Shown here piece after piece: positions 36,746-59,311 of a stretch of DNA of 64,000 nucleotides; positions within the stretch are counted from its first letter, which is position 1; every line of letters starts with the position of its first letter. This stretch comes from Phallusia mammillata (taxonomy: Eukaryota). Location: the NCBI GenBank assembly GCA_965637545.1, contig OZ281494.1:32488001-32552000 (forward strand). The letters run 5' to 3'. The position numbers and the translations under genes were made by a program. Below the pieces are notes generated by a model. The model was given only the letters and a program-made list of their open reading frames with translations, was not told the origin of the DNA and did no database searches.

Positions 36746-37951
36746 AGTAATGTGTTTCAAATTAGCCTCGTTGAAAGAGCCATCGCAGTATTTCCAAGAA
36801 AACCAAAGACAACTCAAGTTTTCCACGAAACACGAAACAAGTGTTGAAATGTCAAAGGTCAACGCTCCTATCGTAGCCAATCGCCTCCCTTGGATGCAAT
36901 TTTCCAACCGAGGCCGAATGAAACACCCGCAAAGGTTAAAAGGTCACGGCTTATGCTTATGCAACTCGGTTAAAAGCCCCGGGCGTCACTTAAGTTGGAT
37001 GAGAACAGCGAGAAATACCGTTCTCTTCGTCACGTGAGCGTCATGCATCGATGGAGACGGCCTTGCTGTGGTTGCTTCTCGTAAATCCGGCGGCTGCGCA
37101 GGCTTGACCTTTCGCAAAATCGCAGCTACATGCTTCAATAATTCGCACACGAATCGAACAGCCTTGACCTATAAAGGCTTTCGAGAGTAGCTAGAAACGC
37201 GTTAGGTATGTTTGTGTTGAGCATAAATGGAAAGCCTTTAAGTTTAAGAAATAAGGAAATCGCTGTTGAAGAGGGGGATTTAATTTGCATTTAACGTGAG
37301 GATGCTAGATGCTTAAGCGAAGGCGTTAAGTTCAAACTTTGGTTTATACCGCCATCTGTGACCTTTTCAGTTAAAGGTTATGACTCAAATTACACTCGAA
37401 AAGGAATTATCATTATTAATGGTGTTTTGTACACAAAATTGCTTTGTTTATTGAAGTTTGACAGTTGTGGTTGGCAAACTGACAGTAGCAGATTGTAATT
37501 GATTTGTGATTTTATTTTGTTGGAATTCTAACCACCAAATGTTCGTTTTGTTTCCCGTTTTATTGCTATCAGTTCAAACAAAAGTATGTTTTATTGAGAC
37601 ATTACAAAGTAACATTTCAAAATGTTGAAAAAAGATGATGATTTTTCGTAACTTTTGCAAAAAAAGTTTATACATTTGGTAATTAATCATTTGGTAAGTA
37701 GCTTTTTGGAGCTACACCTGAAAAACAGTAGAAACTTGCAGAAAAACAAATTCAAATTACTTGGATAAAATACAATGTACTAACACTTAACGACAATTCG
37801 TTTTGTTGGCAAAACACTACCCCAATTTCTAAAACATTTAAATTTTAAATCTAGGCTATTTGTTTAGGAGTTTTGTAAGTTAAATGCTAACTGTGGTGAA
37901 ATTGCACATGAAATTTCGGGATGAGAATTGATACGTTGTTGTGCGAGAAAT

Positions 37952-40900
37952 ATGAATAAGAAGCTACGGAGAATTTTACGTCGCCGGAAGACGAGCAACA
38001 CTGACGACGTCACGAGCAAGGTATGATGTTTATGTGAGATAAAGCAAGACGGTATTGTGTAACAACTTGTATTTTTTAGGCGTTAATTGTTTACCATATT
38101 TGTGGGTAATTTTGATGGTGGTAAAATACAAACTATAATAAAGTTAAGTGGTATCAATGACTGCAAACAATTTTGTAGGGCCAATGTGTTTACCAAAAGT
38201 GTCCCTTGTCGATAACAAAGCCACAAAAACATATATCAGAATTGTTGTCTGAATGACGAAGTATATGATGAAAATTTGTTGTCCTGTTTTTAACGTGTGC
38301 TTGCTGAACAACCGTTACCTGAACAACATTCAGTTTCGTGAAAGTCGATAACATTACCGCTAGGTGCGTGGTATGTCGTGGTAATTTAACAAGGTACGCT
38401 TGTCATTCAGATTAGCGCTGGTCTTCGTCAGGTTGTTGATTTCGGCCTTCTGGCTTTTATGCTCATATCGGTTACAGTTACTAGTTATGAACGCTCGCAA
38501 GACTTTTGTGAATACTTTTTCAGCGAAATGAACACTAAATATTTTTCAAAAACATAGATGATTTACATAAAATCCAGAAACGTTCCAAGAAAATTCGTTG
38601 GAAGCGTTTAAAAATCGAACAAACAGTCTATTCAACAAACACTTCGATGAAACCAAACGAGTGATTCATCTTTACTGCTAAATAATTTGATTTCCCGCAA
38701 ACCAGTAGGTTCCAAAAACCATCATGTTTGTTTTCTCAAAACCCCGGGTTCAACCAAGTTTGAACAGTTTCAAGTTGTTAATACTCCAAACAAAACTGTT
38801 AAGGCTTTGTTGAAACCGCCGCTAGTTTTAGTAAAGTTTAATAATGATTGTTACGCAAACGGCAATGTTTATTTTGTCCCGCCATTCGCTTTGTCCTGGT
38901 TAGTTTAATTCCCAGTTTTAAGGTGGAACTTTTGTTGAATACCGGGCTTTACTTTCCTGAAAAACTGGCTTATCATTTGTTCTATTGGAATTAAAGTTTA
39001 CATAACTAACATGTGCTATTTGCTTTAAGGCTTTAGTGCTAAAGGTTAAAAAAACTCTGGAAGTAGTATTAATGTTAATTTACTTAAATCCTGGCACTGT
39101 AGCTAGTTTTACGTGCCTCATGTACGTTTTAGTATTGCAAAATATTGAATTTCGTCGAACTGTGTTAGAATATGATTGAAAGTCAACAATTATTGCTCCG
39201 ATTGCAGTTTTGTATGCATTGTTACCCGATGAAGGTTGTCGGTTCAAAGTTCAAATCATTGCTTGGCAAACCAGGATTTCGAAATACTGAACAAAACGCT
39301 CCTTGACTAACGAAAGTCGTTGATGGGGGGAAAGAGTCAAAGCCCAATAGAAAGTCCCAAGTACACACTTCTTGAACGTGAAAATGAAACAATTTGAAAT
39401 ATACCTTATAATTAGGGATGTCCATTCAGAATCCTTTAAATGTGAACCGGGTCCAAAGACAAAGCCCACCAGGAAGTCCCAAGGAGTATACACACTTCTT
39501 GAACGTGAAAATGAAACTTCTTGAAAACAAACGCTCTAAAGCATTTGTTAGATCTTCTCCGTGGCACAAAACATTGTGTTTTTGCAGAGTTTAACAAGTT
39601 GACAAAGCTGTTTTACCCATTGAAATAATTGTGCATTAATTTTGTTGCAATTTTGACCTTATAGGTGTACAAAAAATTGCATTTAGCTTTACGAGTTTGT
39701 TAAACACTACTTCAGTGGGTCTTTCATCCAGAATGAAACTAAAAACACCGTCAGCCATATGAGCGGAACTCTAACCCAGTTTCGATAACATATACTCAGC
39801 ATATTACCGAAGTCACGTAAACCCCTAGCGCACCAATGTTCCTTTTGTTTGAATCTTGGCAAATAAAAATTTCCTAACAATTTATCAGAAAAGAGGCATT
39901 TGCCTGTTAAAAGAATTCTCGGAATGCACTTGTGGAAATCTGCGACCGTTGGATGTATGTAAACCTAATACAGATCGCAGTGTTTCACGCCACGATAAAA
40001 CACAGGTCGTTGTTCGGCGCAAGCGAAAATGTTTGCTCTCTTTGAGCTGCTCCGTTTACTGGAAGTACAGTGAATTACCAAAAACCGGCCTTTCTATAAA
40101 ACAGTAAAGCTAAGGCTAAGCCAGTAACTGTTGGACTTTGCATCATTTGAAAGGAGGGTGGGTTGGGAAAACGTTCTTTCTAAAGTCCTCTAAGGTTAAA
40201 TCACAAAAAAATAGGACTTCTGTACGAATCGAATTTAAACCGAGATAGATGATACGCTTTGAAACTTTTTTTTTTTTGAATAATTAGCACTAGAGTTACA
40301 ATCTAACTTTCGAAATGCCAGGATTGTAAACCATTTTAAAGTTTAGGAATTGCCATTTTTTAGGTGTTTGGTATTTGCTGGTGAATGTGAACAGGGCGTT
40401 TTCGACAGTGCAATTGTGTAAAGGACATGTTTTGCATTGGCTAAATCTGTGAGCCTTTCTTGTAGCCAGCAGGCAATTATGTTACCTGCCACAAAAATTG
40501 TACAGCAGAAGGCATACACGTGTGTTAAACATAGAGTCTAAAGCGAAGTAAACTCGAAAAAGAAGAGTTTACAAAATTAGTTCAAAGTGGTACTTTTACT
40601 TTTATATTTGTCTCCTTTAAGACCTAAGCAATGGGTTTCGAAATGCTTGCTTTGCCCTTGGTTCCATTTTTTTGTAAAACACTAATCGACTGGAAGAGTT
40701 GTTTGAAGGACAATCGTAAGAAGGGACAAAGGTCGCTTTTGTGCGTCACAGTGAATGACATTGAGGCATTTTGACGAGAAATGTTTGTTTTAAGCAAACA
40801 ATAAACGTATTCGAGAATTGCTGAGGTTACCTGGGGTCAATTCAGCTCGTACTGGAGGCTTCTCACTACAGCTCAGCCTGGTCTAGAGTCAGTTGTGTAG

Positions 40901-43900
40901 GTAAAACTCCTGAAAACCAATAGTTGACAGATTGAAGCCAATAGGATGCGAGATGTTACTGTTAAAAATGCTTACGGTTTAGCCATTGTAATTTAAGGGC
41001 AAGATAGTATATCTTAGCTTATTCAAATAAAAAAGTATTTTGTTTATATTTCTAGCAGACAAAAATTCAGCTAAATAGGCATATAATAAGCATCAAGTTT
41101 CAAGCATTCCAAAAAAGGTTGTCGTAATGAAAAAATCAGACTGTTACCAAAAAGGTCTTGGGCCACACATTCTTAATGAGCCAAATATAAATAAATTGTT
41201 TCAAACGGGAAGTTTTATTTATCACAAAACGTCCTGAAGTTAACCGCTTGCTCATGGAAAGATGCAAAAAAACAAAAAAAGATCAAAAAGAGTTGTTTTG
41301 GTCTTAAAGCAGAAGCAACTTTAAGAAGGTGCATTAGTTTACAGCTTGGGCTACAAACACTGGCTTAACGATTTTAACGTAATATCTGCTGGAAACCAAA
41401 CAAAGCAGCTAGAAATACGACAATTTTTATAAGTGTATAATATCCCAAAATACAGTATACCAATGATGATGACATAAGCATTTGCCGAAACGTTTAAAAA
41501 TTGCGCATTTCGTCGTTTAAGTCTATTTGCTGCTTGAGCTATTATAACCCAAAAGCAAACGAACAGATTAGTGTATACTATTCCGTATCAAGTGCTTGCA
41601 ATTAAAGACAGTGGTGCTAAATCCAAAAAAAAATTGATTTCGAGTAAGAAAAGAAAGTGAACTGGGATGAGGTTAAGTTAGCACTGCAAACAACAGGTTT
41701 GATTGACAAGTAGTAAAACAGCCACAAGCCACCTCCCGTGATTCTGTGGTTTTGTAAAATCAGATAGCGACAAGACATTAAGACACTTGTCCTTAATTTA
41801 AACACCAAAAATCGGAGATGTGCAAGAAATGCAAGGTTGTAGTATTAGATCGGTCTCCGTTAAACAAGTGCTTGAACAGAAAATAGGCAATTACAGTAAA
41901 TGTAAGATAGGGAATGTTGTAAACTTGAAGAAAGAATTTGGTGATTTCGGTTAAACTTGCGCAAACATAGTTAAAAAACCTCACAAAGGAAAGATGAAAT
42001 AAAAGTTTACAATCGTTTTTACTGTTTAGTTTTGGTTAAATAGAAATTACGGTCGTCGCGATAAACAAACGGATGTATCAGCATTTAAAATATTCAAGTA
42101 AACAGCCCATTGTTTTGAAAAAAATACACCTTTTTGACAGGTTGTGAACCATAATGTCAAATATTTCAAAAACTGTCCTTTTCTCACGCAGCTTTCAGTC
42201 TGTATCTGCTGTTTGGTCTATTTGGACTTTGTTCCCAATTATAGGGGTGTGGTTTCCACTAGGGTCTGTTGTGAAACCTTATTTGACTGAGCATTGTAAG
42301 GGCCTGTGTGCAACAATGTGGGACAAGTGGAAGAAAAAGGTTGGTTTGCAGCGATGTCCGTCTGACAAATATTGGTTGTGTAAATCGCGCTGAAATGTAG
42401 GTAACAGTTTTAAGTGTAAATAAACACTTGTGCACTCGGTTTATGTTTCGACAAAACCTGTTGTGAATGACAGGTTGGAAAGTGCAAAAAAAAAAAACAC
42501 AACTTGGGTGTTTTATTTTATAGCGATTTTTCTGGTCATCGTAGCAACCAACTTGTTCAATTTAGTCGTTAAAATTAGGAGCTGTAACTGGTTGCGAAGG
42601 TAACTTCATACGTTTTGAACATATTTTTAGGGGTTTTTGTTTTCGTTTGAGAACGATTTTAAACCGTATCATCTGTGAGATTTAATCCTACCGCTTTTCG
42701 TAAGAACTGCAATCAAATATTTCCTGGTTGTAGGTTGTCTTTTTTATATCTTCGCGAAAATTTGTGCTTGTCCATTTTTTTAAGGGTAGACGCGTAAAAC
42801 AAACGCATTTGGTGGACCAACTTGTAAACGGAGGTGTAACGAATGTTTAAGCTTTTGTCAACTTCTGTTATAAATTAATCATTGAACCGTATGTTTAGAA
42901 TAAAATAAATGCCTCCAGGCTAGACAAACCGTGCCTGTGCGGATATTCGTTGTTGACAATTGCATCAAATTCATTGTTGATGTGTAGTCGAACATGGACT
43001 TTCAAAAATTGAGGGGGGGGGGTAGAACTAACGAAAGTCAATTCCATATTTCTAGACTGATTGCGAGTAGAAGTGGGCAAATCCGCGATATCAAGACTTC
43101 CTCTAGAAATCACAACGTTGCATACATATCACAGATATAAAATGCAATCAAAACTTAGTATTTAGGACGGGACTGTGTAATGTGACAATAAACTTGCAAT
43201 GTCCGCAACAATATTGTGTTCATTTCAGGTTGCCGATTGGCACTGTTTTATCTGTGAATAACCATAATTAACGTTTGCATTTTGTTTCAACAGAAACAGC
43301 GCGACCTGCCGGCTCTTTTGTCGGCCCGGGACAAGGCTGAACCTAACGTATACCTTGGTGGCGACAGAACAAATAACAATCGCTCATTGGACGACAACGA
43401 GAAGGAAAAGGGCAACGAGTTGATTGTCAATATCGAACCCCCTGAAAACACACAACGCGACATAGAAATCAAACTCGAGGCAGTGCAACCCGAAGGTGCC
43501 GATCGGAATCCGAACATTTCCGAAACTACCAGAGCGAATCCGAATGAGCGAAACGAAGCTATCGTCGAGTCGGTAGAAGCCGTGCCGAATACAAAATGCG
43601 AGTTACATAACCAACGCCCGAGGGCGTCTTATACAACATGCGGCATTATGCAAGACAACGGCGACCATAAGTCTCTCGCATTTGATAAGAGGACGCGAGA
43701 CGACAACAGCGGATTCGAACAACGACGCGATTGGACAACGACAAATCGCGAAGGGGAATGTAAATTCTCGAACAATTTTCGCGATTGCGACGTCGAGATG
43801 AAGCGAACGAGGGAAAATTCGACGGATTCAAACGAGTCTTTTTCGCAGCGCGACGCCGACTGGGGTTGGATATCGATGTCTCGCGACTCACCAACCGACG

Positions 43901-46900
43901 ATTGTTCCTGCGACCACGTGACGTCACATCGATGCACAATGACGTCACAGAGAGGTCGCGAGCGCTGGAACCCGTGGAGGACCTCGACGTGTCGCTGTAT
44001 GACGTCACAATGTCGGAACAAACGTCATTGGAGGGGTTGTTCGTCGCGCGTCGGGGCGGGTCACAATTCCAGAACGGTTGCGCAAGGTCAAGGTTCAATA
44101 CGGATTCGAACCTCGGTCGCTGTTCTGTTTACGATCGTGGACGAAGACGCCCTAGAACGTCGGCCGCGAATTCTAGAATTCGGACAATCCTGGTCAACTC
44201 TACCTCCTCCCCAACCTCACAGAACAGCGCAGCATTGTCAGTGCGATTGTTGTCACTGTGATGTCACAATGCACAGCGACGGGATGGATTGGAACGACTA
44301 CGAAGGTGGGTTTTAGGCAGTAGTGGAATTCAGCCGGTTCGCACCTGTTCTATGGAACCGTTTCACGAAATTTCATGAGATCAGCGAACCGGTTAGCATT
44401 ATTGGTTACTGTCAATGGACTTTTTGTGATAGAACCGGCTGACAAAAAAATTGAATTTTACCACTGGTTTTAGGTCCTGTGCTTTGGTTTTGACGTCAGA
44501 GAGAATTCTATGACGTCATTTCACTTAGTGTATGAACGTCGTGACGTCATATGTACTAATTGCGCAATCCCTTGCTGCATTGGTTGCGGTAATCAATGCA
44601 GCAAAGGATTGCACAGACATATAACAGCGCTTAAGTTACCACAAGAGCCACAAGCCAAATAGAAGCAGCAATAAAGGTCACAGGATATACCTTAAAAGGC
44701 CAGGGTTCTTGTGGCGGTTCGTTGCCCACCCATATGTTTGCATATTAAATACAATTTAATTGTTGCGGCTGAAGCACCCTTAATCTTTTGTCGCACAGGA
44801 AGCGGAATTCAAACAAACTACAGAACTTAATTGTGGTATCACAATGACGCGGTAGCTTTTAAGTTTGCTTTTAGCCGAAGTAGGCGCTTAAACTGCATTT
44901 GCGCTAATTCTTTTGACATGTAGGTTATTAAATGTGGACCTTGATCAAGGCAGTTAAGTTTTATCGCCTTGTAAATTCATTGCATTTACTTTCGCTTTAC
45001 ATATAGTTGTTTGAAAGCTATAAAGATTAAACTTTAAACAATCTGGACTTTGCGTTAACGCTGCTCATGTTTATTGACAAACAAGTTGAAAGAACCAATC
45101 ATAAAGTGACAGCCCGACTTTAAACCGATAAACTGAAAGCGGTTTTTGCTGGTAAATTTTAGGGATAATTTTCCGCAACTTAAGTAACCTTAACTTTAGC
45201 TTCATTGCTGCATTTTCCAATGTGTTTTAACACAAGGCGTACCGAATTTAAGCTTAAAAGAGAAGACATTGCACCAAATAGAACGACGTTTAGAATGGAA
45301 GAGTATAGAGAAATTATATTCAAATATTTAATGCGATATGTCAGAAGGTTGTTGTTACAGCACATAAAAACGAGGTGTTAAAGGTGTTTGAAACGGATAA
45401 TCACTCGCTGATCTATTGCCAGGGTCAAATTTTAGACCTATGTTGTCTTTTGCATAACTACTACATAGTTTCAAACAAGTGCATTTGCAGCCGTTTTCAG
45501 AGACAAACCTGCAGTTTGTCAATAGTTTGCAAGTTTTTCTATAAAGATACAACTTGGCAAAATTGTATTTTCAGTAAGCATCGAAATTCGGAGCAGTTTC
45601 AATTGAAACACGCATTGCTCAAAAATAGTTCACTACCAACGTAATTGCTGCCGTAAGTCTGAATTAATCTCGTCAAAAACGGACGCAACGTCTAGCCCCA
45701 GGGCCAATTCAACGTCAAATAAAGCTCGCTGTGACGCATAAACGTAAATCGACCTGAAGTATTTGCAGATCGCTTGACGCTCGAACGTCAAACAGTCGAA
45801 TTTCCCAGTACCCTTTTAAATATTAACGAATTTTCCAGCAGGAGTTAGAATTTTATGAATGGTATGTGTGTTGTGGGATAGATAATTTAGACGGTGTTCC
45901 TAGAACATTCATGTGAAAGGTAAACGTACCGGCAAAGGCAAGGTCATTCAATGACAGCGATTGTTTATTGATTGAGCGCGTGAAAATAAAGCAACGAGTC
46001 ATTTTTGTCGATAATATTATTTGCAGGGTAGTTGAAATTTAGTGGCTCAGATAACGGTGCCTTGATAGTTTTATCATACTTGTATCAAATAAAGAAACTG
46101 TGCTGTTATCAAAAAGAAGTTAGAGTGCATCAGAGGCATTTTATGAACTTTTGCATTTTATGAAGTGAAGCGGTTTTAAATGTCGGAGAAAGACTGTAAA
46201 ACGCTTTTAGGGGTGTTTTTTGTTTCAGTCTCGAGCCAGACTGTGGTGTAAAGTGACCTGAAAAGGATTTTCTAAAGGGGATTTCCTAAAAATGCGGCGT
46301 TGTTGGCAGTTCAAAGTTTTGCAAGCTGCGCTTTGTACTCATTGGTATTTAAACTTCGCGGCAAAAAAGTCATTGGGCCGTGTGAGGAGCAGTTCCTCAG
46401 TAGGAAAACTGTGGTCTGCACTGCGGGGTATTTTAACGACACTCTTTATCGGGGGGTATGCCCTCTTAAAAGGGTATTTTACGGCCGGTTTGTGTTGTGT
46501 AAACATCTAGCTATACCAAGGAGCCCTTCCCTTCCCACAAACTTGTGGTATAGCCTTGAATGCGGTGTCTTATTTCACTTTTGTTGCAGGAACTCGAATT
46601 CTGTGAATTTTGCGTTGACTTGGTAATGAAACTTTGAGCGCTTAACAGCTGGAGAAGGTGAAGTGCACTATGGAATGTCTAATGACTCCATATGCGATGC
46701 AACGTTTTAGCTTTCTATTGGCGCGTAACTTCCTAATTTTTAAGGCACTTTTTTACATAGGCTTCAATCTATTTGAAAGCATTTCGTCAAAATTCTAATA
46801 CGTTCGCGATTCGTTCTAGATTCAACAATACTTTTATATTCAAGAAACCAAACATGCTAAATCTTAACCATTTAAAATCGACATTTTTTATGTACTATAG

Positions 46901-49900
46901 TGAAAATACGTTTGGGAAAATGTTACAAAAAAATGTTGTGCCAAAGTGTTGGATTTTAACAGCCAGGTGTTCGGCCAAGTCGGTTTTAGCTTCGTTGCCC
47001 CGGGCGCAGCAGATCGTGCCCTGATTTCACCGTAAGTTTGTTGTTTTGCGGCCAAATTTTGACCAAAAGGGGAATTGCGGGAAAATTTACCGACATTGGG
47101 TGTCGAGGAAAATGTACCTCAGTTATCTGGAAGAAGGTTGATAAAAGATCAAAATTTAAACATCGCATACTTGACAGCAAACGTTCATTTAGAATTTCGC
47201 AAATTAAAGTCAACGTATTAGCATTCAGGTTCTTTTGGTAATCTGTATGTCTTTTTCGGAAAAAAAACTCTTGAAAGAGTTTTATAAGTTGAACCAAGGT
47301 TGTAGACACTTTACCTTGCAAACTTATCGCATATTTAACACGACTAGCATTTAGAAAACCGATTGTCACAACATGTACGTAATCTAAAAGTCAGGTAAAA
47401 TTTGCAACTTTAAGGCGTTAAATCACACAAATTAGGAAGCAAATACAGTAAAATCGACCAAACAGTAAAAATTGTGCGCACCCAATATCCAGTCGCCACG
47501 TCACCTTAAACTTGTGAGTTTCATTTCCACGTAAAGTCAATTACAGTGAGAAAAACCAGCTGTAAATCTCGCGTTTCAAAGGAAACTGCACGCTTTGGGT
47601 GTTATCGAATTGCCTTGAATCACCAAAGCCCGCTGTACGGGGCTTAAGTTCCGCAAAAGCAAAGCCCTGAACCCGTCATTCGTTCCGTAACAAAACCTAT
47701 AATCCTACGCTTAAATCACCAAACGCACGAGACCTAATACGACCGGCTTTCCCTCATTGCAGTTCTTGGAAATTTTGAAGGCGTCGGTATTGGAAAGCTT
47801 CTTCTGTGCGTCTCTTTATCGATTGTTAAGCGCGATTCCAAGAGTCCTTTCGGTTCATTGTGCATAGATTCAAACGTGCGATCAATAACAATACAATGAT
47901 CGTGCCGTCCCGCGTTCCAACGTTCACACAAAAGAGGCACTTGTTTCGAAACAGTTTTACACACAACCCAAGCTGTCAAGAAACATAGAAGTATTTTTAC
48001 CACTTCCTCTATCTCAGCTCCGCAAGTATATGTGTATTTATATTTGTAGGAAATATTTTTTCGCCTACCCAAGTCCTGATCCATAGTAACGCATTGGAAT
48101 GATATCATTTTAGTCTTACCATCGTCTAAGCCCCACATATGGCAGGGCTTGTAATTTTATTGCAGATTTTTTCGTTATCTTAAAAACTTATACATAGCAA
48201 TGTGTATAGGGAAAATAATTTTATTACTTTTCGTTTTAAGTCCCCATACGTCGGGAAAACGATTTTTCCATATCTCCAGTCCCCCAAAAATTTGCTTCAT
48301 GCACCGTTTACCACACGTTTAATTTATGTTTTTACGTAAGCAAAGTGGTAATAGTTCGGACATGTTTTCCTAGAAACAATCACTTCATATATAGAGTTAG
48401 TGTTTATCACAATGTCAAGCAAATGCTATAAGGTCAATTGCACAACCTTGGCACATACGAACTCTTGCAAAAACAAGAGTGAAGTCTGAGTCAAAGCGGA
48501 TACACACATCATTTAAATCTGCCTATTCATATCAGTACAACTTCCTCACTGATAAACAGAATTGTGGAGCAAGAATTACTTGTCAATGCAAACCGCTGTA
48601 CGTCGGCCCTGCTGTATATAAGGCTTTCACTTGAATTTGAGCAAAGTTGTTTATGCACTTAGCAGGCATTCGTCTTACAGCAGATCGATTTACATGAAGG
48701 TCTTAAGTCGGTTATTTTGGGATTTTGTGCAATCGACAATAGAACGACAATTTACCCTTAACCAATAACACGTCCAAGTTGCATTAAAATTAGCTTTTGA
48801 AATTAATTCACCTCAATATAACGGGGATTTTAGACGCTTTTTTAAAATTTCTACAAAAACAAGCGTTTTAAAATCGTTTTAAAACGCGTATGCAACAACT
48901 TTTAGCAATTGCCACAACTTAAACAGGTTGTTTACTAAACTTCGCAGTCAACCATAAAAACACAAACGCTTTTCCACACAATGACCGATTTGTTTGTGAA
49001 ACCTCGTTGGAGAACCTCGGACTCCCTGAAGAAAAGCTTTACCAACTCCCACCGCCATGTTATAAGCAGTACCACACCACACCACATGGTACAACAGGAT
49101 GCTTGAAGGCGTCGCTACTCTATAGAGGAATACCGATTACAGTGGTTAAGATTGAAAGGACCATGCATCATTACTGCAGAACAGAGGTTGTCAGTCTTTT
49201 TTCTCTTATTAACCTATTGACAGATTTTGCAAATAAAATGTACCACCAAAGTTCCTAACCATACTAAAACACATCTATGTGACATTAAAATAGCACATAT
49301 TTGAACACAAAGCAGGCAATTCTACGAATGCAAATTGACTCTTGGGGAACAAACTCTGCTGCAAAAGCAATATTACTTACAATGGTGAAGATTGCAGAGA
49401 CGAAATATAAAACCTTTGGGAACACAACAACGATTGCAAATATTGGGATTGTTTTTCATAACACTTGCAAACAACCCTACAGAGTGTGTGCTATTGCGCT
49501 GAACAAAATGTTATGAAGGCTAAGGACCCAAAAATAACGGTTGCACTGCATAACATGTGGATATCGTAAATGTCAAGCACGAAACAAGCTAATACGGGGT
49601 CGTAAAACTTGATGTGTGTTTCGTCGAATAGGCTTTTTCATGTTTACGCTTTGCTGGGAGCGGGAAAACTGACTGTCACAGTTGGTTTGTGGAAACTAGA
49701 GCCAGTAATTTGGAAAGAAAATCCGCGAAATTGCGTCACGGCGGTGACAACAGGCGACAAATGAATCATAACTTCCGAAGGGTTGACTACGAAATCCACA
49801 CAATCGTCAGAAAGACACATCTCACATTTCACAAAAAAACTCCGCACCAGCAGGAAGCTTTACATCCCATCAGCGCGCTGTCTGTTGTCAAAACACACAC

Positions 49901-52900
49901 ACTTTAATACGAGTTCTTCCGACTGCCTATGGATACAGCGCGGTTTAATTTACTGCCAGACTGGCGCAGAATTCCTAGGAATCCTGACACTTGTTTAATG
50001 CGATTCCCAGGATCGCAGAAACAGCTGATCGCGCAAATTGCCAGTCTCGTATACAAAGTAATTTGAACAGCGCAAAGTCTAACTAGAGTTACCAGGAAAG
50101 GTGACAACCACGCTGACAGGTGCTTGGTCATTGGTATGATTAGTAGTTTGAACTTCTCTTAAAGGGACCTCGAACTCATTGTTTTGGCGGCAAACTAGAC
50201 GTGCTACTGACGACATACTCACAAAGACCACGAATTAATGATGTCAAATTCAACAAGACACGATACCATACTAAAACACAAACCTAACATTGAAGTAATA
50301 ACTAAAGAAAGTTAGTTGCGCAATATTCTATGCAAATAGATTGCCTCAGACTTGCTATAAAACCGAGGAAAGAAAAGCATGTTGTTTGAAAGCTAGTGAT
50401 TCATGGTAACAGTGTTTTAAATCGGTTGTCGTTTACCCAAGGTTTAGTTACAGCGGTAGTAGGTATTCCTGTTAAGCAGTTATTACTCCGGACGTTAACA
50501 TGTTAGCTTAAACAATAATGACTTTCACAAAAAAATCAACAATTGGTATTTCAACGTCCTCTATTTCAGAGGATTCATAATCCCCACTTGTTAACGGCAC
50601 TGGTTCTGAAAGAACTTTTAATGGTCCATGAGAGCGTATTCAAGCGTGAATATAGGTTCGTCACTGTTCCTTTTACCGGGCAGGACAATTCTCAGTAATG
50701 ACTCGCTTTCTGCGCCGCCCCCAAACCGCAACCCTTCAAACGACCTTACGCGTTACTGAGCGGCAGTAAATGTTTGACTTGGTAAGGCGAACTGGCGGGA
50801 TGCGCCGGGCATTTAAAAGGCGCCTTTGACGCACTACTGCCAACCACTCGCTCTGAACATCGCCACAGAAGTGGTCCAGAAACAAGACTGAAACGAATGG
50901 AAAGAGATCAGCTTATGCTGTAAAGTAGACTAGTTGTTTTAAAGAAATTAAGTCGTGCTTTTTATTGGGATTAGTTAGGCAGTGTTGGTGTGCATTTATG
51001 AGAACAATTAGATCGTTCAACTTTTGGGACAAGTTTTGATGCATGCAAGAAGAAAAGATTAAATTTTAAAGCGTTATTTGACAACAGATTTGCTAGTAAA
51101 GTTATCAACCACTTTGTCGTATAACTTAGTCGCGCACAAGTTGTTGAACAACAGAAGTTTTTTTTAGCATGGGGTTGTCATTCGGTACATGATAACCTTC
51201 TTTACGCATATTTGATATCTGCATTTACATTGTAGTTATATTTAAAACCGGGTAACGCATCAATACTGCTCCTTGATAATGTGACGTAGGTTGTTGGGTA
51301 AAATTAAAGAAATTGTGTCAGAGGTCAAAAACGCAGTTCCGAACCAAAGGTTTTAGGAGAGGTGTTGTGTGTATAGCACTGGGAATTACGCGTAGCAAGC
51401 AATAAACAGTGGGGCTCCCGCAAAGACCGCGTCAGACATGCTTTGTGACGTCACCATGCCTAAAAGGCTTTCAGTGACGCAGATAGTGGTTGTGGAAGAC
51501 TTATAGCGAGACCTGATGTTATAGACAAGGTGTGTTGCATTGGCGGTTTTGTGAACTTAAAGCAGGGTTCAGTCGGTACTTCGTAGCAGTTGGAGTCTGC
51601 ACAACTTTGGAAAATTCTCACATATATTTTGAATTCGGTACCATAAGATTTTGAACGCCTTGTGTTGCCGAAAACATTTTCTTACTTAAGTCGTTTTATT
51701 TCACTTTTGCAGATTCGAGCGTCTGTCGCCATAGCAACCACTGTCACTTTCCCGTCAGCAACATCAACTCTCTTCAAACACAAAACGTCAACGAATTCGT
51801 GACATCATCATCTGTACCTTCTACGTCATCATCCAACATGGCACCGTCGTTGGGCTTCATGGGCAATGAGGGTGACGTCACGGTTGCTACGCAACAGGAC
51901 TTTCAATCCGCGCCGACAAATAACAACAACACGAACTTCTGTCATTGCTGCTGTCGACGACAGTCTATGACGTCACAGCCGCGTTTGTTTCGTAACGATT
52001 TTGAAGGAAATTTCGACAAACGATTGTCCGGCGACGTTTGGCGCGGGAATGACGATTCGCCGATTGTTACAACGTCCCTGTCGCATTTTGAACTTTCGAA
52101 ACGGTTGTATGCGCGGCTAATTGCTTATTGCCACGCTAAGAAACTCCTCTCGAACATTTACTCCAGTGCAAACGAAGACCGTGAATGCGATTTTGTTTCA
52201 ACAATCCCACGTGATGAGAACCAACACTTCGGGGCCGGACTACATTCCCGCGCCGGTTTTCGGGACTCGATCCGCGGCGATAGCGACTTTATTTCCACTG
52301 GGGTCTCGGACGCCGCACAAGTGCTTTGTCATTTGGCTGGAGTGTTTGAAACCGTGGAAGAATGCCCTTGGTACTGCGGCGCCATGACGGGCCAGGAGGC
52401 CAAGATAAGACTCCGTTCAACCCCGCCTGGGACCTTCCTGCTGCGCGACAGCAGTGACTCACGGTAAGATTAAGTTTAAGATTTTGTAAGAGTTTAGAAT
52501 TAAGCACACATGAAATCCCATTAGTGGAAAGTCTGTTAAAAGTTTAAATGAATGCGAAATATGACCAAAAAGGTTTCCCTGTAAACACATTTTTAACTTT
52601 TAAAGGAAGCACACAGTTTTGGTAAAGTGTGTGCGTAAAAATAGGTTTGAAAATGTGTAAGGATCGGTGAAAATCGATTAAAAAACACTGTCAAGCAAAA
52701 TTTGCCTATAAATGAGTCCGGTATGCGCTATTCGATTAGGAAAAACAAAAACATTACCAAATAAGAACGCAAAATGAAAAATATGTTTAAAAAATTCTAG
52801 TTCGGAAAACAAAGTTTGAAGTTAACCAGTTATGACAGTAGCCAAAAACGTAAATTGGAGCGCTTTCCCGTTGCATATAAAAGTCACGTTTTCAACGAAC

Positions 52901-55900: not shown

Positions 55901-58900
55901 CAAAATGGCACTAACTACGTTTTTCACAACCAGAAGCGACATCTTTGTGGTTTATTTGCCACGTTTTTACGCGAAATTCCGCAGAACTTGGAAATCGTTT
56001 CGCGTGGTTTCGGAAACGACCTCGTGTGACTCGAATCCTAATGCGTTTCGCCGAAGTACGTAATCGATCTAAAGTTTCTGCGAAATCGCACCCTCCAATG
56101 GTCAAAACCGCAGCTAATTTCGACTCCAGAGGTCCGGATTAAGGTTGGGCCTCTCGAGTGCCTCCTGCTGACAGAAGTAGTACCACTTGATCGAAATAAA
56201 ATGAACATTTTCAAAAAACTTTTTGGACAGCAGTAAAAAGCGATTTTTTAATTTTTGTTTGAAAGAATTGCACCAGCATGATGATGCATAAAAACTTACG
56301 AAGTCATGACACAGCAAAAAAGGAACCGACAAAATCGCTACTAAGCGCCATCAGAATTTTCCTGCAAATGCATTGCCTGCCAAGTTTTTTGAAAATAAGT
56401 TCGTTCGATTGTTATGCAACAAAAATACTGATTGTTACGTCATAAGCGCCCAAGGCGAACTAGGTCAGTGAAGAAATTTCGACCAAACTTCGCTTACATA
56501 ACGGAAGCAGTTATGTAAGGCCGTTGTGACGTCACATTTGGTATGCACAAACTGAAATGTTACGAAACATGAACGATGTGCTTTTGGGCGGCATTGGTTT
56601 GTTTAATCATAAAGGGATTAAAATATTTGAATAGTCTTATATATTTTCAATCGCTCATCGATTTTGGGAGGCAATATCAGTCACTTGATTGAAAATCATT
56701 CGGTTAATCCGGGATGACTTTTGTAGAGATATAACATTGGTAGGGAGGGGCAGATATAAATGCTATGTACAGGATCTGTCCTTATAATAGTAGGTATGTT
56801 AATAAAGAGGGGCAGAAATGAAATATTTCTCCAAATCCCAGCCTTTGGCAACCAAAAAAGAACTTTTCGGGCGGCTAATGTGTGATTCCGATTGTTGCAA
56901 TTTCCTTAAAGAAGCTGTATTCAATTTTATACTGTTCCTAGCCTCATATAAAACAGATAAGGCGTTAAAACAGGCCTTAAGGCGTCAGTTGAGTAAAATT
57001 AAACTGGAAGGGTGGCTTAGCACATATTGCCCTTGCATATACACTATAACCTATTTTAAAACATGAATATATTTCCTATGCTTATTTTGTATTGGGTCCC
57101 ATATTAGCCATCGTCTTTTATAACTTAAGTCGTTTCTGCAGGCAAAAACTCATGGGTCCCCACACATGCAAAGTTGAAAATAATGCAATTCAAGAGATAA
57201 CCATGAGAAAGTCGGGTGTTGTAAGGTAAAACACAGTGATCGGCACTGGGCTTAAATAATAATACTATGTAGAATACAAACTATAAAATTAGATTCACCC
57301 CAGATATTGTTTGAAGTATGTCCTATTTAACGTTTTAAAAAACTGACCCATTTTAGGGGGCTACTAGGGATTGGGTTCGACACACAAACTAAAAAATATA
57401 TAAAAACCACAATGACTCAATCAATAGTACTGCAAAATTTCAGCCCAATCCGCCAATGTTTAAAATTTTGACCACTAGAGGTGTTTTGAGCAACAACCCA
57501 AAACTGTTTCTGACGTCATAGGGCTGTTAACAAGCCCCTAACTGCCATGGCGCAAAAACGACCACCAAGCAACCCACCAACGAGCAACATACAACTGGTT
57601 GCCCTTGTAACACTATTGCTCCAAAGAAATCTTTCGTTTGTGGTGCCCAGTAACATACAAATACGTTTTACACTTTAGGGGCTTGTGGGGTAAATGTTAG
57701 GACTACAGGGTTGAACACAACAATCGACACCTATAAATGGCATACTATACAAGAAATCCAAATTTCAGCCAATTCTGAAACTGTTTAAAAACTCACCCAT
57801 TTTAGGGGGCTAGCGGGGTAAATACTGGGGTTATCAACAAAAACAAAGTGGGATGCACATCTACATGAATATATCTACCATCTGTGTAAATTTCAGCCAA
57901 ATCCATCAAACATTTGATGGAAAAACGAGTCGGACAAACTTTGGGTAAAAACACCCATTTTAGGGGGCGAGCGGGGTAAATACTGGGGTTATCAACAAAA
58001 ACAAAGTGGGATGCACATCTACATACCTATATCTCCCATATGTGTAAATTTCAGCCCAATCCATCAAACATTTGATGGAAAAACGAGTCGGACAAACTTC
58101 CGGGAAAAAATACCTATTTTAGGGGGCTAGCGGGGTAAATACTGGGGTTATCAACAAAACCAAAGTGGGATGCACATCTACATAACTATATCTTCCATCT
58201 GTGTAAATTTCAGCCAAATCCATCAAACATTTGATGGAAAAACGAGTCGGACAAACTTTGGGAAGAAAAAAACAAGGAAGAAAAAAAAAGAAAAAAAACA
58301 AAAACAATTCGAGTAAAATCAATATGTGTCCCCTTCAGCGTAGGGGACCCATAACTAGCGTCATCTACTTCCTACTTTCGTTTACTACGCAAGAAGAACG
58401 CTACCGTTGTAAGCGTAGGTGTTTTTTGTGCATCCGGACAAATAGGTAGAAACGGTTTCTGACATTTACATCAGCGTCTACATCACCCTACTGACGCATA
58501 TAAGCCCGTGTTGCGTAGTTCTACGTTGCAAAAGCCCAAATTGACACAAACATATTTTGGCTGTTTGCAAATGTGCACAATAGGACTTATGGTACAAACA
58601 AGTAAAAACCCCAGAACAAAAATTGACAAACTAGCATTTACATTTTATCAACACGTCCTGCTGAGTTGGTTTGGACGGTCACAGAAAAAAATTATTTTCA
58701 CATTTCACAAAAAATGTCTGTTTTAAACACTTAAGGTGGTTGAAAATGTGGTTACATTTTGTTTAATCCTTGAATTTTTGTTTCACAGATTCCTCTTCAG
58801 TATGAGTCTGATGACGCGGCGAGGCGCAACCAGTATTCGAATCGTTTACAAGAACGGAAGATTCGGATTCGATTCGGAAGAAAGCGAACCCAGCAAGAAA

Positions 58901-59311
58901 TCGAGCAAGTCCCATCGGCACCGAACCGAGAGAACGAAATGCGTTATTCGAATGATACTTCACTACACCAACGCTCTGGCAACCAAAAAACAACGACACT
59001 CCATAGAAGACCACCACGACTCCGTTGCGAACCCTAGCGGCGGAAACATGCACTCCAACGGCGCCACTAGAGGCGGTAGCGCATCCGAAAAACGACAGTT
59101 TTTGTGTTACTCCATTGACCGTGGCACGCGAAAAGAAATTCCCATACAACTCGTTCGGCCGGTAGGTGGTGGTGTACGCAGCCTCCAACAAATCAGCCGA
59201 GCGTGTATAAACAAACAGTGTCGCCTATGGGAAAATCCTTCGGTTATTGAGGACCTACCCCTGCCAGCGGTTTTAAAGAAATATGTAAGGAAGTATCCGT
59301 ATCCCATCTAG
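37952..59311 (+). CDS. SOCS2/CISH-like: Suppressor of cytokine signalling, SOCS2/CISH clade, with a long N-terminal extension; model exons 37952-38020, 43294-44305, 51713-52463, 58789-59311 (784 aa)
   Basis: Exons 3-4 encode an ESS helix (AAQVLCHLAGVFETVEE), an SH2 domain (PWYCG...GTFLLRDSSDSR/FLFSMSLMTRRGATSIRIVYKNGRFGFDS...CVIRMILHY), a PEST-like insert and a C-terminal SOCS box (VRSLQQISRACIN...LPLPAVLKKYVRKYPYPI*). Phases are compatible: 0 (AAG|gtatga to cag|AAA), 1 (G|gtgggt to cag|AT) and 2 (CG|gtaag to cag|A). Exons 3-4 are certain; joining exons 1-2 is inferred from phase and splice-site quality only. Confidence 0.85.
39339..39517. repeat. Local direct duplication, period about 127 bp
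   Basis: acacacttcttgaacgtgaaaatgaaac is identical at 39363-39390 and 39490-39517, preceded by similar caaagccca...aagtcccaag. Confidence 0.8.
44318..44466. mobile_element. 149-bp hAT-type MITE just downstream of the SOCS exon-2 donor
   Basis: TIR cagtagtggaattca / tgaattttaccactg; perfect TSD gttttagg (44310-44317, 44467-44474); gaaccgg subterminal motifs. Confidence 0.88.
52999..54407. promoter_or_regulatory. Cluster of STAT (GAS, TTCYNRGAA) sites in the last SOCS intron
   Basis: TTCTAGGAA at 52999 and 53588, TTCCAAGAA at 54041, TTCCTGGAA at 54399. STAT-driven induction of SOCS/CISH genes is established. Confidence 0.55.
56412..56567. promoter_or_regulatory. Cluster of bZIP-type sites (C/EBP, PAR/NFIL3, CRE)
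   Basis: TTATGCAA 56412, TTACGTCA 56435, TTACATAA 56494, TTATGTAA 56511, TGACGTCA 56527 and TTACGAAA 56560 within about 155 bp. Confidence 0.5.
57330..58358 (+). mobile_element. Putative Helentron-associated (HINE/DINE-1-like) element with internal 158-159 bp tandem repeats
   Basis: Three near-identical units (tagggggc at 57803, 57961, 58120) plus diverged upstream copies (about 57353 and 57675), followed by an A-rich tract and a terminal hairpin gtcccct-tcagcgt-aggggac (58328-58348), then ccataactag. The tandem repeat is certain; the element class and left boundary are inferred. Confidence 0.55.

What the first reader, a model, noticed from the sequence alone, without database searches (positions are those of the whole stretch)
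43919..51975. Perfect CRE palindromes written into SOCS coding exons (possible dual-use codons)
Seen in the sequence: TGACGTCA occurs six times in 630 bp (43919, 43940, 44000 in exon 2; 44491, 44511, 44542 just inside the intron). It also occurs at 51446 and at 51873 and 51968 in exon 3. Base composition alone predicts roughly one such 8-mer per ~95 kb. The exonic copies produce the recurring peptide (M/V)TS(Q/H), e.g. HVTSH, MTSQR, MTSQC, MTSQP. Inference: the protein repeat may be a by-product of an exonic CREB/ATF enhancer, or the N-terminal extension was exonised from CRE-rich regulatory DNA.
Basis: partly seen in the sequence, partly recalled or inferred. Interest (0 to 1): 0.7.

Follow-up and report, generated by a model that had tools for sequence, protein, structure and literature searches.

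The report
Switch-protein word written into SOCS codons
A sea squirt's SOCS gene really does carry an eight-letter gene-switch docking word in its protein-coding text, chosen at the DNA level, but the same word is over-used across this whole genome, so SOCS is one dense example and not a special case.

Summary
TGACGTCA sits at all nine stated places. Five copies lie in coding exons 2 and 3 of the Phallusia mammillata SOCS1/2/3/CIS gene, and spliced RNA contigs confirm those exons.

The word is favoured at the DNA level:
- Shuffling synonymous codons predicts 0.56 copies; five are seen (P about 5e-5).
- It appears in two reading frames, giving [M/V]TS four times and DVT once.
- Three further one-letter variants also lie in the exons.

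- The genome holds 29,527 copies, one per 8 kb, not one per 95 kb.
- The true unit is the 10-letter palindrome RTGACGTCAY: 19,302 copies, about 17 times its control.
- Close pairs are about 17 times more frequent than independent placement would give.
- SOCS is in the dense tail, at roughly one comparable locus per megabase.

The N-terminal exon is old and shared with Ciona, so it was not exonised from regulatory DNA.

My best reading is a set of CREB/ATF-type docking sites that form an intragenic cluster and are tolerated in weakly constrained protein linkers. Binding and function are inferred, not shown.

This scan has flagged the same word in several other genes of this genome.

The parts
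37952..38020 (+). SOCS exon 1 coding part (23 codons). The transcript reaches back at least to about 37856. It holds the near-copy CGACGTCA at 38005 (peptide DDVT).
   Evidence: Loose end of the RNA contigs maps to 37989-38018. Sequence read. The N-terminus of P0001 is identical.
43294..44305 (+). SOCS exon 2. It is coding, Cys/His-rich and has no Pfam domain. It holds TGACGTCA at 43919, 43940 and 44000, all in the RTGACGTCAY form and in frame [M/V]TS. It also holds the one-letter variant TGATGTCA at 44259 (CDVT) and the C/EBP palindrome TTGCGCAA at 44078.
   Evidence: Contigs lie on 43292-44305 with 0 mismatches in X1, X3 and X15. Frames; variants; TTGCGCAA.
44330..44442 (.). MITE-like high-copy element with 11-nt terminal inverted repeats, just inside intron 2. 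It is not part of the CRE cluster.
   Evidence: Inverted repeat I10. Contig depth in the hundreds to thousands over 44331-44467.
44491..44567 (.). Single-copy module in intron 2: TGACGTCA at 44491, 44511 and 44542, then the perfect C/EBP palindrome ATTGCGCAAT (44559-44568), which opens a 25-nt-arm hairpin at 44561-44615.
   Evidence: Only a self-match in the genome. Fold z-score -5.8. Only sub-threshold miRNA-model hits.
51446..51453 (.). TGACGTCA (GTGACGTCAC) in intron 2, 260 bp upstream of exon 3.
51713..52463 (+). SOCS exon 3. It holds TGACGTCA at 51873 (frame GDVT) and 51968 (frame MTSQ), and the variant TGACATCA at 51800 (VTSS). The SH2 domain starts at its 3' end.
   Evidence: The loose end of the contigs matches the exon start. 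Pfam SH2. Frames.
56527..56534 (.). TGACGTCA (GTGACGTCAC) in intron 3.
57511..57518 (.). TGACGTCA (CTGACGTCAT) in intron 3.
58789..59311 (+). SOCS exon 4: the rest of the SH2 domain, an insert, the SOCS box and the stop codon. It holds no TGACGTCA.

Best explanation
The TGACGTCA copies are genuine instances of the 10-bp palindrome RTGACGTCAY. From general knowledge, this is the optimal full site of CREB/ATF-class bZIP dimers. They lie in the coding exons and introns of the Phallusia mammillata SOCS1/2/3/CIS gene.

Shown:
- The word is favoured at the DNA level. It overrides synonymous codon choice and leaves the peptides [M/V]TS and DVT in poorly conserved Cys/His-rich linkers of an old N-terminal region.
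- The same 10-mer is about 17-fold over-represented and strongly clustered across the whole genome. SOCS is therefore one dense locus among an estimated couple of hundred.

Inferred:
- The copies are docking sites of a CREB/ATF-type factor.
- The 650-bp stretch across the exon 2 / intron 2 boundary, with six CRE and two C/EBP palindromes, works as an intragenic bZIP-responsive enhancer.
- The exonic copies serve as dual-use codons that the protein tolerates because those segments are weakly constrained.
For: Sites and chance level. Spliced exons.

Codon tests:
- The synonymous shuffle expects 0.56 copies; 5 are observed (P about 5e-5).
- The codon-order shuffle expects 0.07.
- The word occurs in two reading frames.

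Three one-letter variants lie in the exons. Two of them are the CpG-transition forms TGATGTCA and TGACATCA. TGACGTCA is the top 8-letter palindrome in the exons and in the gene, and GACGTCAC is the top 8-mer in the exons.

Genome counts:
- TGACGTCA: 29,527 against 6,119 for the reversed control.
- RTGACGTCAY: 19,302 against 1,166.
- YTGACGTCAR: 1,994 against 1,302.
- Pairs 8-40 bp apart: 2,001 against 10 for the control and about 120 expected if sites were independent.

In a random 200 kb there were 23 copies. Half-sites such as TGACG were not enriched, so the full palindrome is the unit.

All five exonic copies have R..Y flanks. The intron cluster is single-copy and not a transposon. Two TTGCGCAA lie within the same 650 bp, although that word occurs only once per 41 kb genome-wide.

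The words fall outside the conserved protein blocks. The Ciona orthologue shows the same peptide imprint, 9 compatible peptides against 0.53 expected, and two of them align with the exon 3 sites.
Against: - No binding, chromatin or reporter data are available, so function is inference only.
- No TGACGTCA lies near the promoter. The nearest is 5.9 kb downstream of the transcript start, unlike classic CREs.
- The genome-wide excess means a neutral bias could produce the same picture.
- After allowing for exon GC and CpG content, the excess of exons over introns within this gene is only about 2.6-fold and not significant.
- A third ascidian has no exonic copy and only 2 copies, neither with R..Y flanks, in 17 kb of its SOCS locus. 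The sites are therefore not conserved across ascidians.
- C/EBP and PAR palindromes do not clearly sit near CRE copies elsewhere in the genome.
Confidence: 0.5

Rival explanations
1. Neutral by-product of a genome-wide process. Some mutation, repair or gene-conversion bias, or shielding of sites by a germline-bound factor, creates or keeps RTGACGTCAY everywhere that constraint is low. On this view the SOCS copies regulate nothing.
For: - The 10-mer is about 17-fold over-represented genome-wide, in unique non-coding DNA, in repeats and in exons.
- The SOCS copies sit only in unconserved protein linkers and introns.
- The copies turn over between species.
- The CpG-transition forms are also about 2-fold enriched, as expected for decay from an abundant parent word.
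Against: - No process known to me creates a specific 10-bp palindrome.
- Shielding the central CpG from decay cannot lift a word above non-CpG controls.
- Tight clustering at 8-40 bp and the co-occurring C/EBP palindromes at this locus look more like site clusters.
Confidence: 0.3
2. RNA-level role. Copies of a self-complementary word in one transcript pair with each other, or bind an RNA-binding protein, to shape mRNA or pre-mRNA structure.
For: - The copies at 43919 and 43940 pair as a 9-bp stem in the predicted fold.
- The intron copies at 44491 and 44511 form a 12-nt inverted repeat.
- Close pairs are common genome-wide.
Against: - The exon fold is no better than shuffles (z-score -0.87).
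- The intron z-score of -5.8 comes mainly from a separate hairpin.
- Many genomic copies lie singly in AT-rich DNA that looks non-coding.
Confidence: 0.07
3. Protein-level motif. Selection acts on a repeated C-x-C...[M/V]TS[Q/H] peptide, for example a metal-binding or phosphorylation motif, and the DNA word follows from codon usage.
For: - Four copies encode [M/V]TS[Q/H] next to Cys/His residues.
- The close relative keeps VTS at two of the three exon 2 sites.
Against: - The synonymous shuffle gives P about 5e-5.
- The same word also appears in the DVT frame and in the introns.
- The excess is genome-wide.
- The segments are unconserved in Ciona and in a fourth ascidian.
Confidence: 0.05
4. 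The N-terminal extension was exonised from CRE-rich regulatory DNA.
For: Exon 2 has no known domain and adjoins an intronic CRE cluster.
Against: - Exon 2 is a 1-kb open frame present in spliced RNA.
- It has blocks conserved in Ciona and two other ascidians, and the same N-terminal start MNKKLRR in Ciona.
Confidence: 0.03

Closest known systems
Full palindromic cAMP response element (CRE, TGACGTCA) bound by CREB/ATF bZIP dimers
   Same: Exact 8-mer, and the genome-wide preferred flanks R..Y make a 10-bp palindrome. The copies occur in clusters of two or three, 20-35 bp apart.
   Different: - From general knowledge, classic functional CREs lie close upstream of the transcription start. Here none is near the start, and the copies lie in coding exons and introns 6-20 kb downstream.
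- Half-sites are not enriched.
- The genome density, one per 8 kb, is very high.
- Binding and cAMP response are untested.
Dual-use codons ('duons'): transcription-factor sites inside coding sequence
   Same: A factor motif lies inside the CDS, with codon choice biased to spell it.
   Different: - Here the motif also shapes the amino acids, in two frames.
- It turns over between species.
- It is part of a single-word excess across the genome, not a mix of many motifs.
- Occupancy was not tested.
SOCS1/2/3/CIS family of cytokine-signalling suppressors
   Same: SH2 domain followed by a C-terminal SOCS box. The database names the identical protein SOCS1/2/3/CIS.
   Different: The N-terminal region is about 570 aa long, Cys/His-rich and ascidian-specific, and the SH2 domain carries an insert.

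Membership tests
CRE / CREB-ATF binding site | Perfect TGACGTCA core | tested here: met
   Thirteen copies in the window, 11 of them in the SOCS gene.
CRE / CREB-ATF binding site | Symmetric flanks extending the palindrome (RTGACGTCAY) | tested here: met
   Genome-wide, 65% of copies have R..Y flanks against 7% with Y..R. In the window 10 of 13 copies have R..Y flanks, including all 5 exonic ones.
CRE / CREB-ATF binding site | Promoter-proximal position (general knowledge of functional CREs) | tested here: not met
   No copy lies between 7660 and 43919, while the transcript starts near 37856.
CRE / CREB-ATF binding site | Occupancy by CREB/ATF and response to cAMP | not testable with these tools
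   No ChIP, ATAC or reporter data were reachable.
Dual-use codons (exonic factor sites) | Motif inside a confirmed CDS | tested here: met
   Spliced contigs and an identical 784-aa database protein.
Dual-use codons (exonic factor sites) | Synonymous codon choice biased towards the motif | tested here: met
   Five copies observed against 0.56 expected, P about 5e-5.
Dual-use codons (exonic factor sites) | Conservation of the motif at synonymous sites in orthologues | tested here: inconclusive
At the peptide level:
- The close relative keeps 2 of the 3 exon 2 contexts.
- Ciona has compatible peptides at both exon 3 positions.
- A third ascidian has none.
SOCS family | SH2 domain plus C-terminal SOCS box | tested here: met
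   Pfam SH2 at 580-634 and SOCS_box at 740-777, both above the curated cut-offs.
Transposon- or satellite-borne CRE copies | Flanks repeated elsewhere in the genome or in tandem | tested here: not met
   The intron cluster matches only itself. The exon copies share no more than 13-14 nt. Such repeat families do exist elsewhere in the genome, one with about 727 copies.

The most novel reading that the evidence does not exclude
Phallusia, and perhaps Ciona, may be under a genome-wide DNA-level pressure that creates or keeps the 10-bp palindrome RTGACGTCAY. The pressure would be strong enough to override codon choice and to write [M/V]TS and DVT into weakly constrained parts of many proteins. SOCS would be one dense example of a single factor-site word imprinting the proteome.
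Probability: 0.3. Interest if true: 0.8.

Novelty: new variant of a known kind. Interest (0 to 1): 0.5.

Why it matters
If the copies are bound, this locus is a clean test case for coding sequence that doubles as regulatory sequence. It has five perfect sites in two exons that can be removed by synonymous changes, in an animal where embryo electroporation reporters are routine.

The wider point is that one 10-letter palindrome is about 17-fold over-used across a chordate genome and visibly shapes protein sequence. Full-text searches of the paper library available here found no description of this. Explaining it by selection for binding, or by a mutation or repair bias, would say something about how factor sites and proteins co-evolve.

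For SOCS itself the result is sobering. The pattern is not a SOCS-specific invention, and the long N-terminal region is an old coding region.

Tried and rejected
- Chance or composition: rejected.
- Local tandem duplication of the exon copies: rejected. They share only 13-14 nt.
- Transposon origin of the intron cluster: rejected, because it is single-copy. The neighbouring high-copy element at 44330-44442 is separate.
- Repeat families as the main source of the genome excess: one family has about 727 copies and another only 5, so repeats contribute but do not explain 29,527 copies.
- 'Mostly exonic' genome-wide: my random 200 kb does not support this. About 5 of 23 copies lie in plausible coding frames, and 30% lie in open frames of 300 nt or more against 21% for random positions.
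- General excess of bZIP palindromes: rejected. TTACGTAA is under its control and TTGCGCAA is only 1.7 times its control.
- Genome-wide co-location of C/EBP or PAR palindromes with CRE: not seen.
- Significant RNA structure in exon 2: not seen.
- Known RNA family for the intron hairpin: none above threshold.
- Literature: no description of this excess in ascidians.

Steps that could not be run:
- The spliced model was searched exon by exon, by reference. The joined sequence was not built or searched. The identical database protein P0001 was used instead.
Full report
**1. Observation**

Dinucleotide-preserving shuffles give 0.83. An order-3 Markov model of the window expects 1.5.

**2. The gene**

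RNA-like contigs of 2.5-2.85 kb from three separate studies lie on 43292-44305 without a mismatch. Their loose ends continue upstream into 37989-38018 and downstream into the start of the exon at 51713. These are spliced transcripts, and they fix the following exons:
- exon 1: CDS 37952-38020
- exon 2: 43294-44305
- exon 3: 51713-52463

The last exon, 58789-59311, carries the rest of the SH2 domain and the SOCS box.

The model gives 784 aa. An all-against-all HMMER search with exon 2 alone, given by reference, returned a 784-aa protein that is 100% identical over that exon. Its printed sequence agrees with my exon translations. It is CAB3231341.1, 'SOCS1/2/3/CIS suppressor of cytokine signaling' of Phallusia mammillata. 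Pfam finds SH2 and SOCS_box above threshold.

I searched the model exon by exon and did not build or search a joined sequence.

Five copies are therefore truly coding: three in exon 2 and two in exon 3. Six are intronic.

**3. DNA word or peptide?**

I kept the protein and the gene's own codon usage and permuted synonymous codons. This gives 0.56 copies on average; five are seen, reached in about 1 of 20,000 shuffles. Permuting codon order gives 0.07.

Four copies are read as RTG-ACG-TCA ([M/V]TS). One is read as GGT-GAC-GTC-ACG (GDVT).

Three more exonic places are one letter away from the word:
- CGACGTCA, peptide DDVT, in exon 1
- TGATGTCA, peptide CDVT, in exon 2
- TGACATCA, peptide VTSS, in exon 3

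The last two are the CpG-transition products of the perfect word.

TGACGTCA is the commonest 8-letter palindrome in the exons and in the gene, and GACGTCAC is the commonest exonic 8-mer. The exon copies share only 13-14 letters, so they are not local duplications.

A word that recurs in two frames and in the introns is a DNA-level feature. The peptide repeat is its shadow.

**4. The genome-wide background**

The window lies at C1:32,488,001-32,552,000 of a 240.3-Mb assembly. The whole-genome counts are:

| Word | Copies | Reversed-word control |
|---|---|---|
| TGACGTCA | 29,527 | 6,119 |
| RTGACGTCAY | 19,302 | 1,166 |
| YTGACGTCAR | 1,994 | 1,302 |
| Two copies 8-40 bp apart | 2,001 | 10 |
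| TTACGTAA | 5,949 | 15,016 |
| TTGCGCAA | 5,911 | 3,512 |

TGACGTCA occurs once per 8.1 kb, or 7.9 per 64 kb. The real unit is the 10-bp palindrome RTGACGTCAY, about 17-fold over its control. For close pairs, about 120 would be expected if sites were independent.

A random 200-kb sample from two chromosomes holds 23 copies, against 2.4-3.4 expected. Half-sites such as TGACG are not enriched. The excess is specific to this word: TTACGTAA falls below its control and TTGCGCAA is only 1.7 times its control.

Some copies ride on repeats or tandem arrays, and one interspersed family has about 727 copies. Most copies look unique.

In my sample about 5 of 23 copies lie in plausible coding frames. I therefore cannot confirm that the excess is mostly exonic genome-wide.

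Copy density rises weakly with CpG observed/expected. The SOCS exons are very CpG-rich, at 1.4-1.8.

**5. How unusual is SOCS within this genome?**

| Stretch | Copies seen | Genome mean |
|---|---|---|
| 16-kb gene | 11 | 2.0 |
| 8,057 bp | 9 | 1.0 |
| 630 bp | 6 | 0.08 |

In the first 951 kb of the same chromosome, one locus reaches 10 copies in 8 kb and none exceeds 4 in 630 bp. SOCS is in the dense tail, at roughly one such locus per megabase. It is not unique.

This scan's earlier notes list the same word in dynein, MRF, NLR and COUP-TF genes of this genome. I treated these as leads only.

**6. Local anatomy**

Six CRE copies and two perfect C/EBP palindromes (TTGCGCAA at 44078 and 44560) lie within 650 bp across the exon 2 / intron 2 boundary. 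At one TTGCGCAA per 41 kb genome-wide, two in 650 bp is unexpected. The local GC and CpG richness softens that.

The intronic part is single-copy. It is followed by a 25-nt-arm hairpin that matches no RNA family above threshold.

No CRE copy lies near the transcript start.

**7. Orthologues**

The exon 2 query found only four proteins among 1.84 billion representatives:
- the Phallusia protein itself
- a 60%-identical fragment from a close relative
- the Ciona SOCS (NP_001071822.1, 26% identical)
- a fourth ascidian fragment

The alignment shows conserved blocks (DWGW[IV]S and [LF]FTI[VS]DED...RPR[IV]LEFG). Ciona also shares the same start, MNKKLRR. The CRE copies lie in the unconserved linkers between these blocks. 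The exon is therefore old, which argues against exonisation from regulatory DNA.

At the peptide level:
- The close relative keeps VTS at the first site.
- It has VTSQ where Phallusia has MTSQ at the third site. That change falls on the R flank letter and is compatible with keeping the word.
- It has LTTQ at the second site.
- Ciona has nine word-compatible peptides, against 0.53 in residue shuffles, the same load as Phallusia. Two of them (DDVI, RVTS) roughly align with the exon 3 copies.
- The fourth ascidian has none.

A metagenome scan recovered 17 kb of a further ascidian SOCS locus. It has two TGACGTCA, both intronic, neither with R..Y flanks, and none in exon 3.

The load therefore seems shared by Phallusia and perhaps Ciona, with turnover of positions.

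**8. Mechanism**

I commit, at about 0.5, to the following reading. These are docking sites of a CREB/ATF-type bZIP dimer. The exon 2 / intron 2 stretch is an intragenic cluster of bZIP sites, and the exonic copies are tolerated dual-use codons in weakly constrained linkers.

Shown: the DNA-level preference, the palindromic 10-mer, the clustering, single-copy status, and placement outside conserved blocks.

Inferred: binding and enhancer activity.

The main rival, at 0.3, is a neutral genome-wide bias that piles the word up wherever constraint is low. With present data I cannot separate the two. After composition control, the exon excess over introns in this gene is only about 2.6-fold.

The other rivals score lower:
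- An RNA-pairing role is weakly supported, because the exon fold is no better than shuffles (z-score -0.87).
- A protein-motif origin is contradicted by the codon test and by the second reading frame.

**9. Literature**

Full-text searches found no description of a TGACGTCA excess in ascidians or of exonic CRE loading of SOCS.

**10. Verdict**

The SOCS pattern is a dense local case of a genome-wide single-word excess that this scan has met repeatedly in this genome. As a SOCS-specific claim it is modest. The genome-wide phenomenon behind it is the interesting part and remains unexplained.

Noticed in passing
window:31442-33611: A 159-bp tandem repeat upstream of SOCS, with a TTACGTAA (PAR/NFIL3-type bZIP palindrome) in most units. 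The window has 14 TTACGTAA, although the word is below its control genome-wide (5,949 against 15,016). This array is therefore locus-specific, unlike the CRE word.
   Followed up: partly
window:44561-44615: A single-copy 25-nt-arm hairpin in SOCS intron 2, opening with the perfect C/EBP palindrome ATTGCGCAAT. The fold z-score is -5.8. Only sub-threshold hits to miRNA precursor models were found.
   Followed up: partly
window:44330-44442: A MITE-like element with 11-nt terminal inverted repeats just inside intron 2. It is covered at depths of hundreds to thousands by contigs from all four runs, so it belongs to a very high-copy family.
   Followed up: no
window:57794-58269: A second 159-bp tandem repeat (3 copies, 93% alike) in SOCS intron 3, followed by an A-rich tract.
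   Followed up: no
G000:C1:15036188 and about 727 other places: An interspersed repeat family carries one CRE in the fixed context GGTGCATTATGACGTCACAAAAAT. It accounts for about 2.5% of all copies in the genome.
   Followed up: partly
P0003 (Ciona intestinalis SOCS, NP_001071822.1): The Ciona orthologue has nine peptides that could be spelled with TGACGTCA ([M/V]TS and xDV[T/I]), against 0.53 expected. This hints that the word excess is not confined to Phallusia. The DNA was not checked.
   Followed up: partly
window:37856-59311 (SOCS exons): The SOCS exons have CpG observed/expected of 1.4-1.8 and use ACG and TCG as their commonest Thr and Ser codons. The first 16 kb of the window has CpG observed/expected of about 0.5. 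This suggests a boundary between a CpG-rich and a CpG-depleted domain.
   Followed up: partly
window:36792-38643: STAT-type sites (TTCNNNGAA) cluster around the SOCS start: at 36792 and 36821 upstream, and at 38519, 38583 and 38643 in intron 1. This fits a cytokine-feedback gene. No statistics were run.
   Followed up: no
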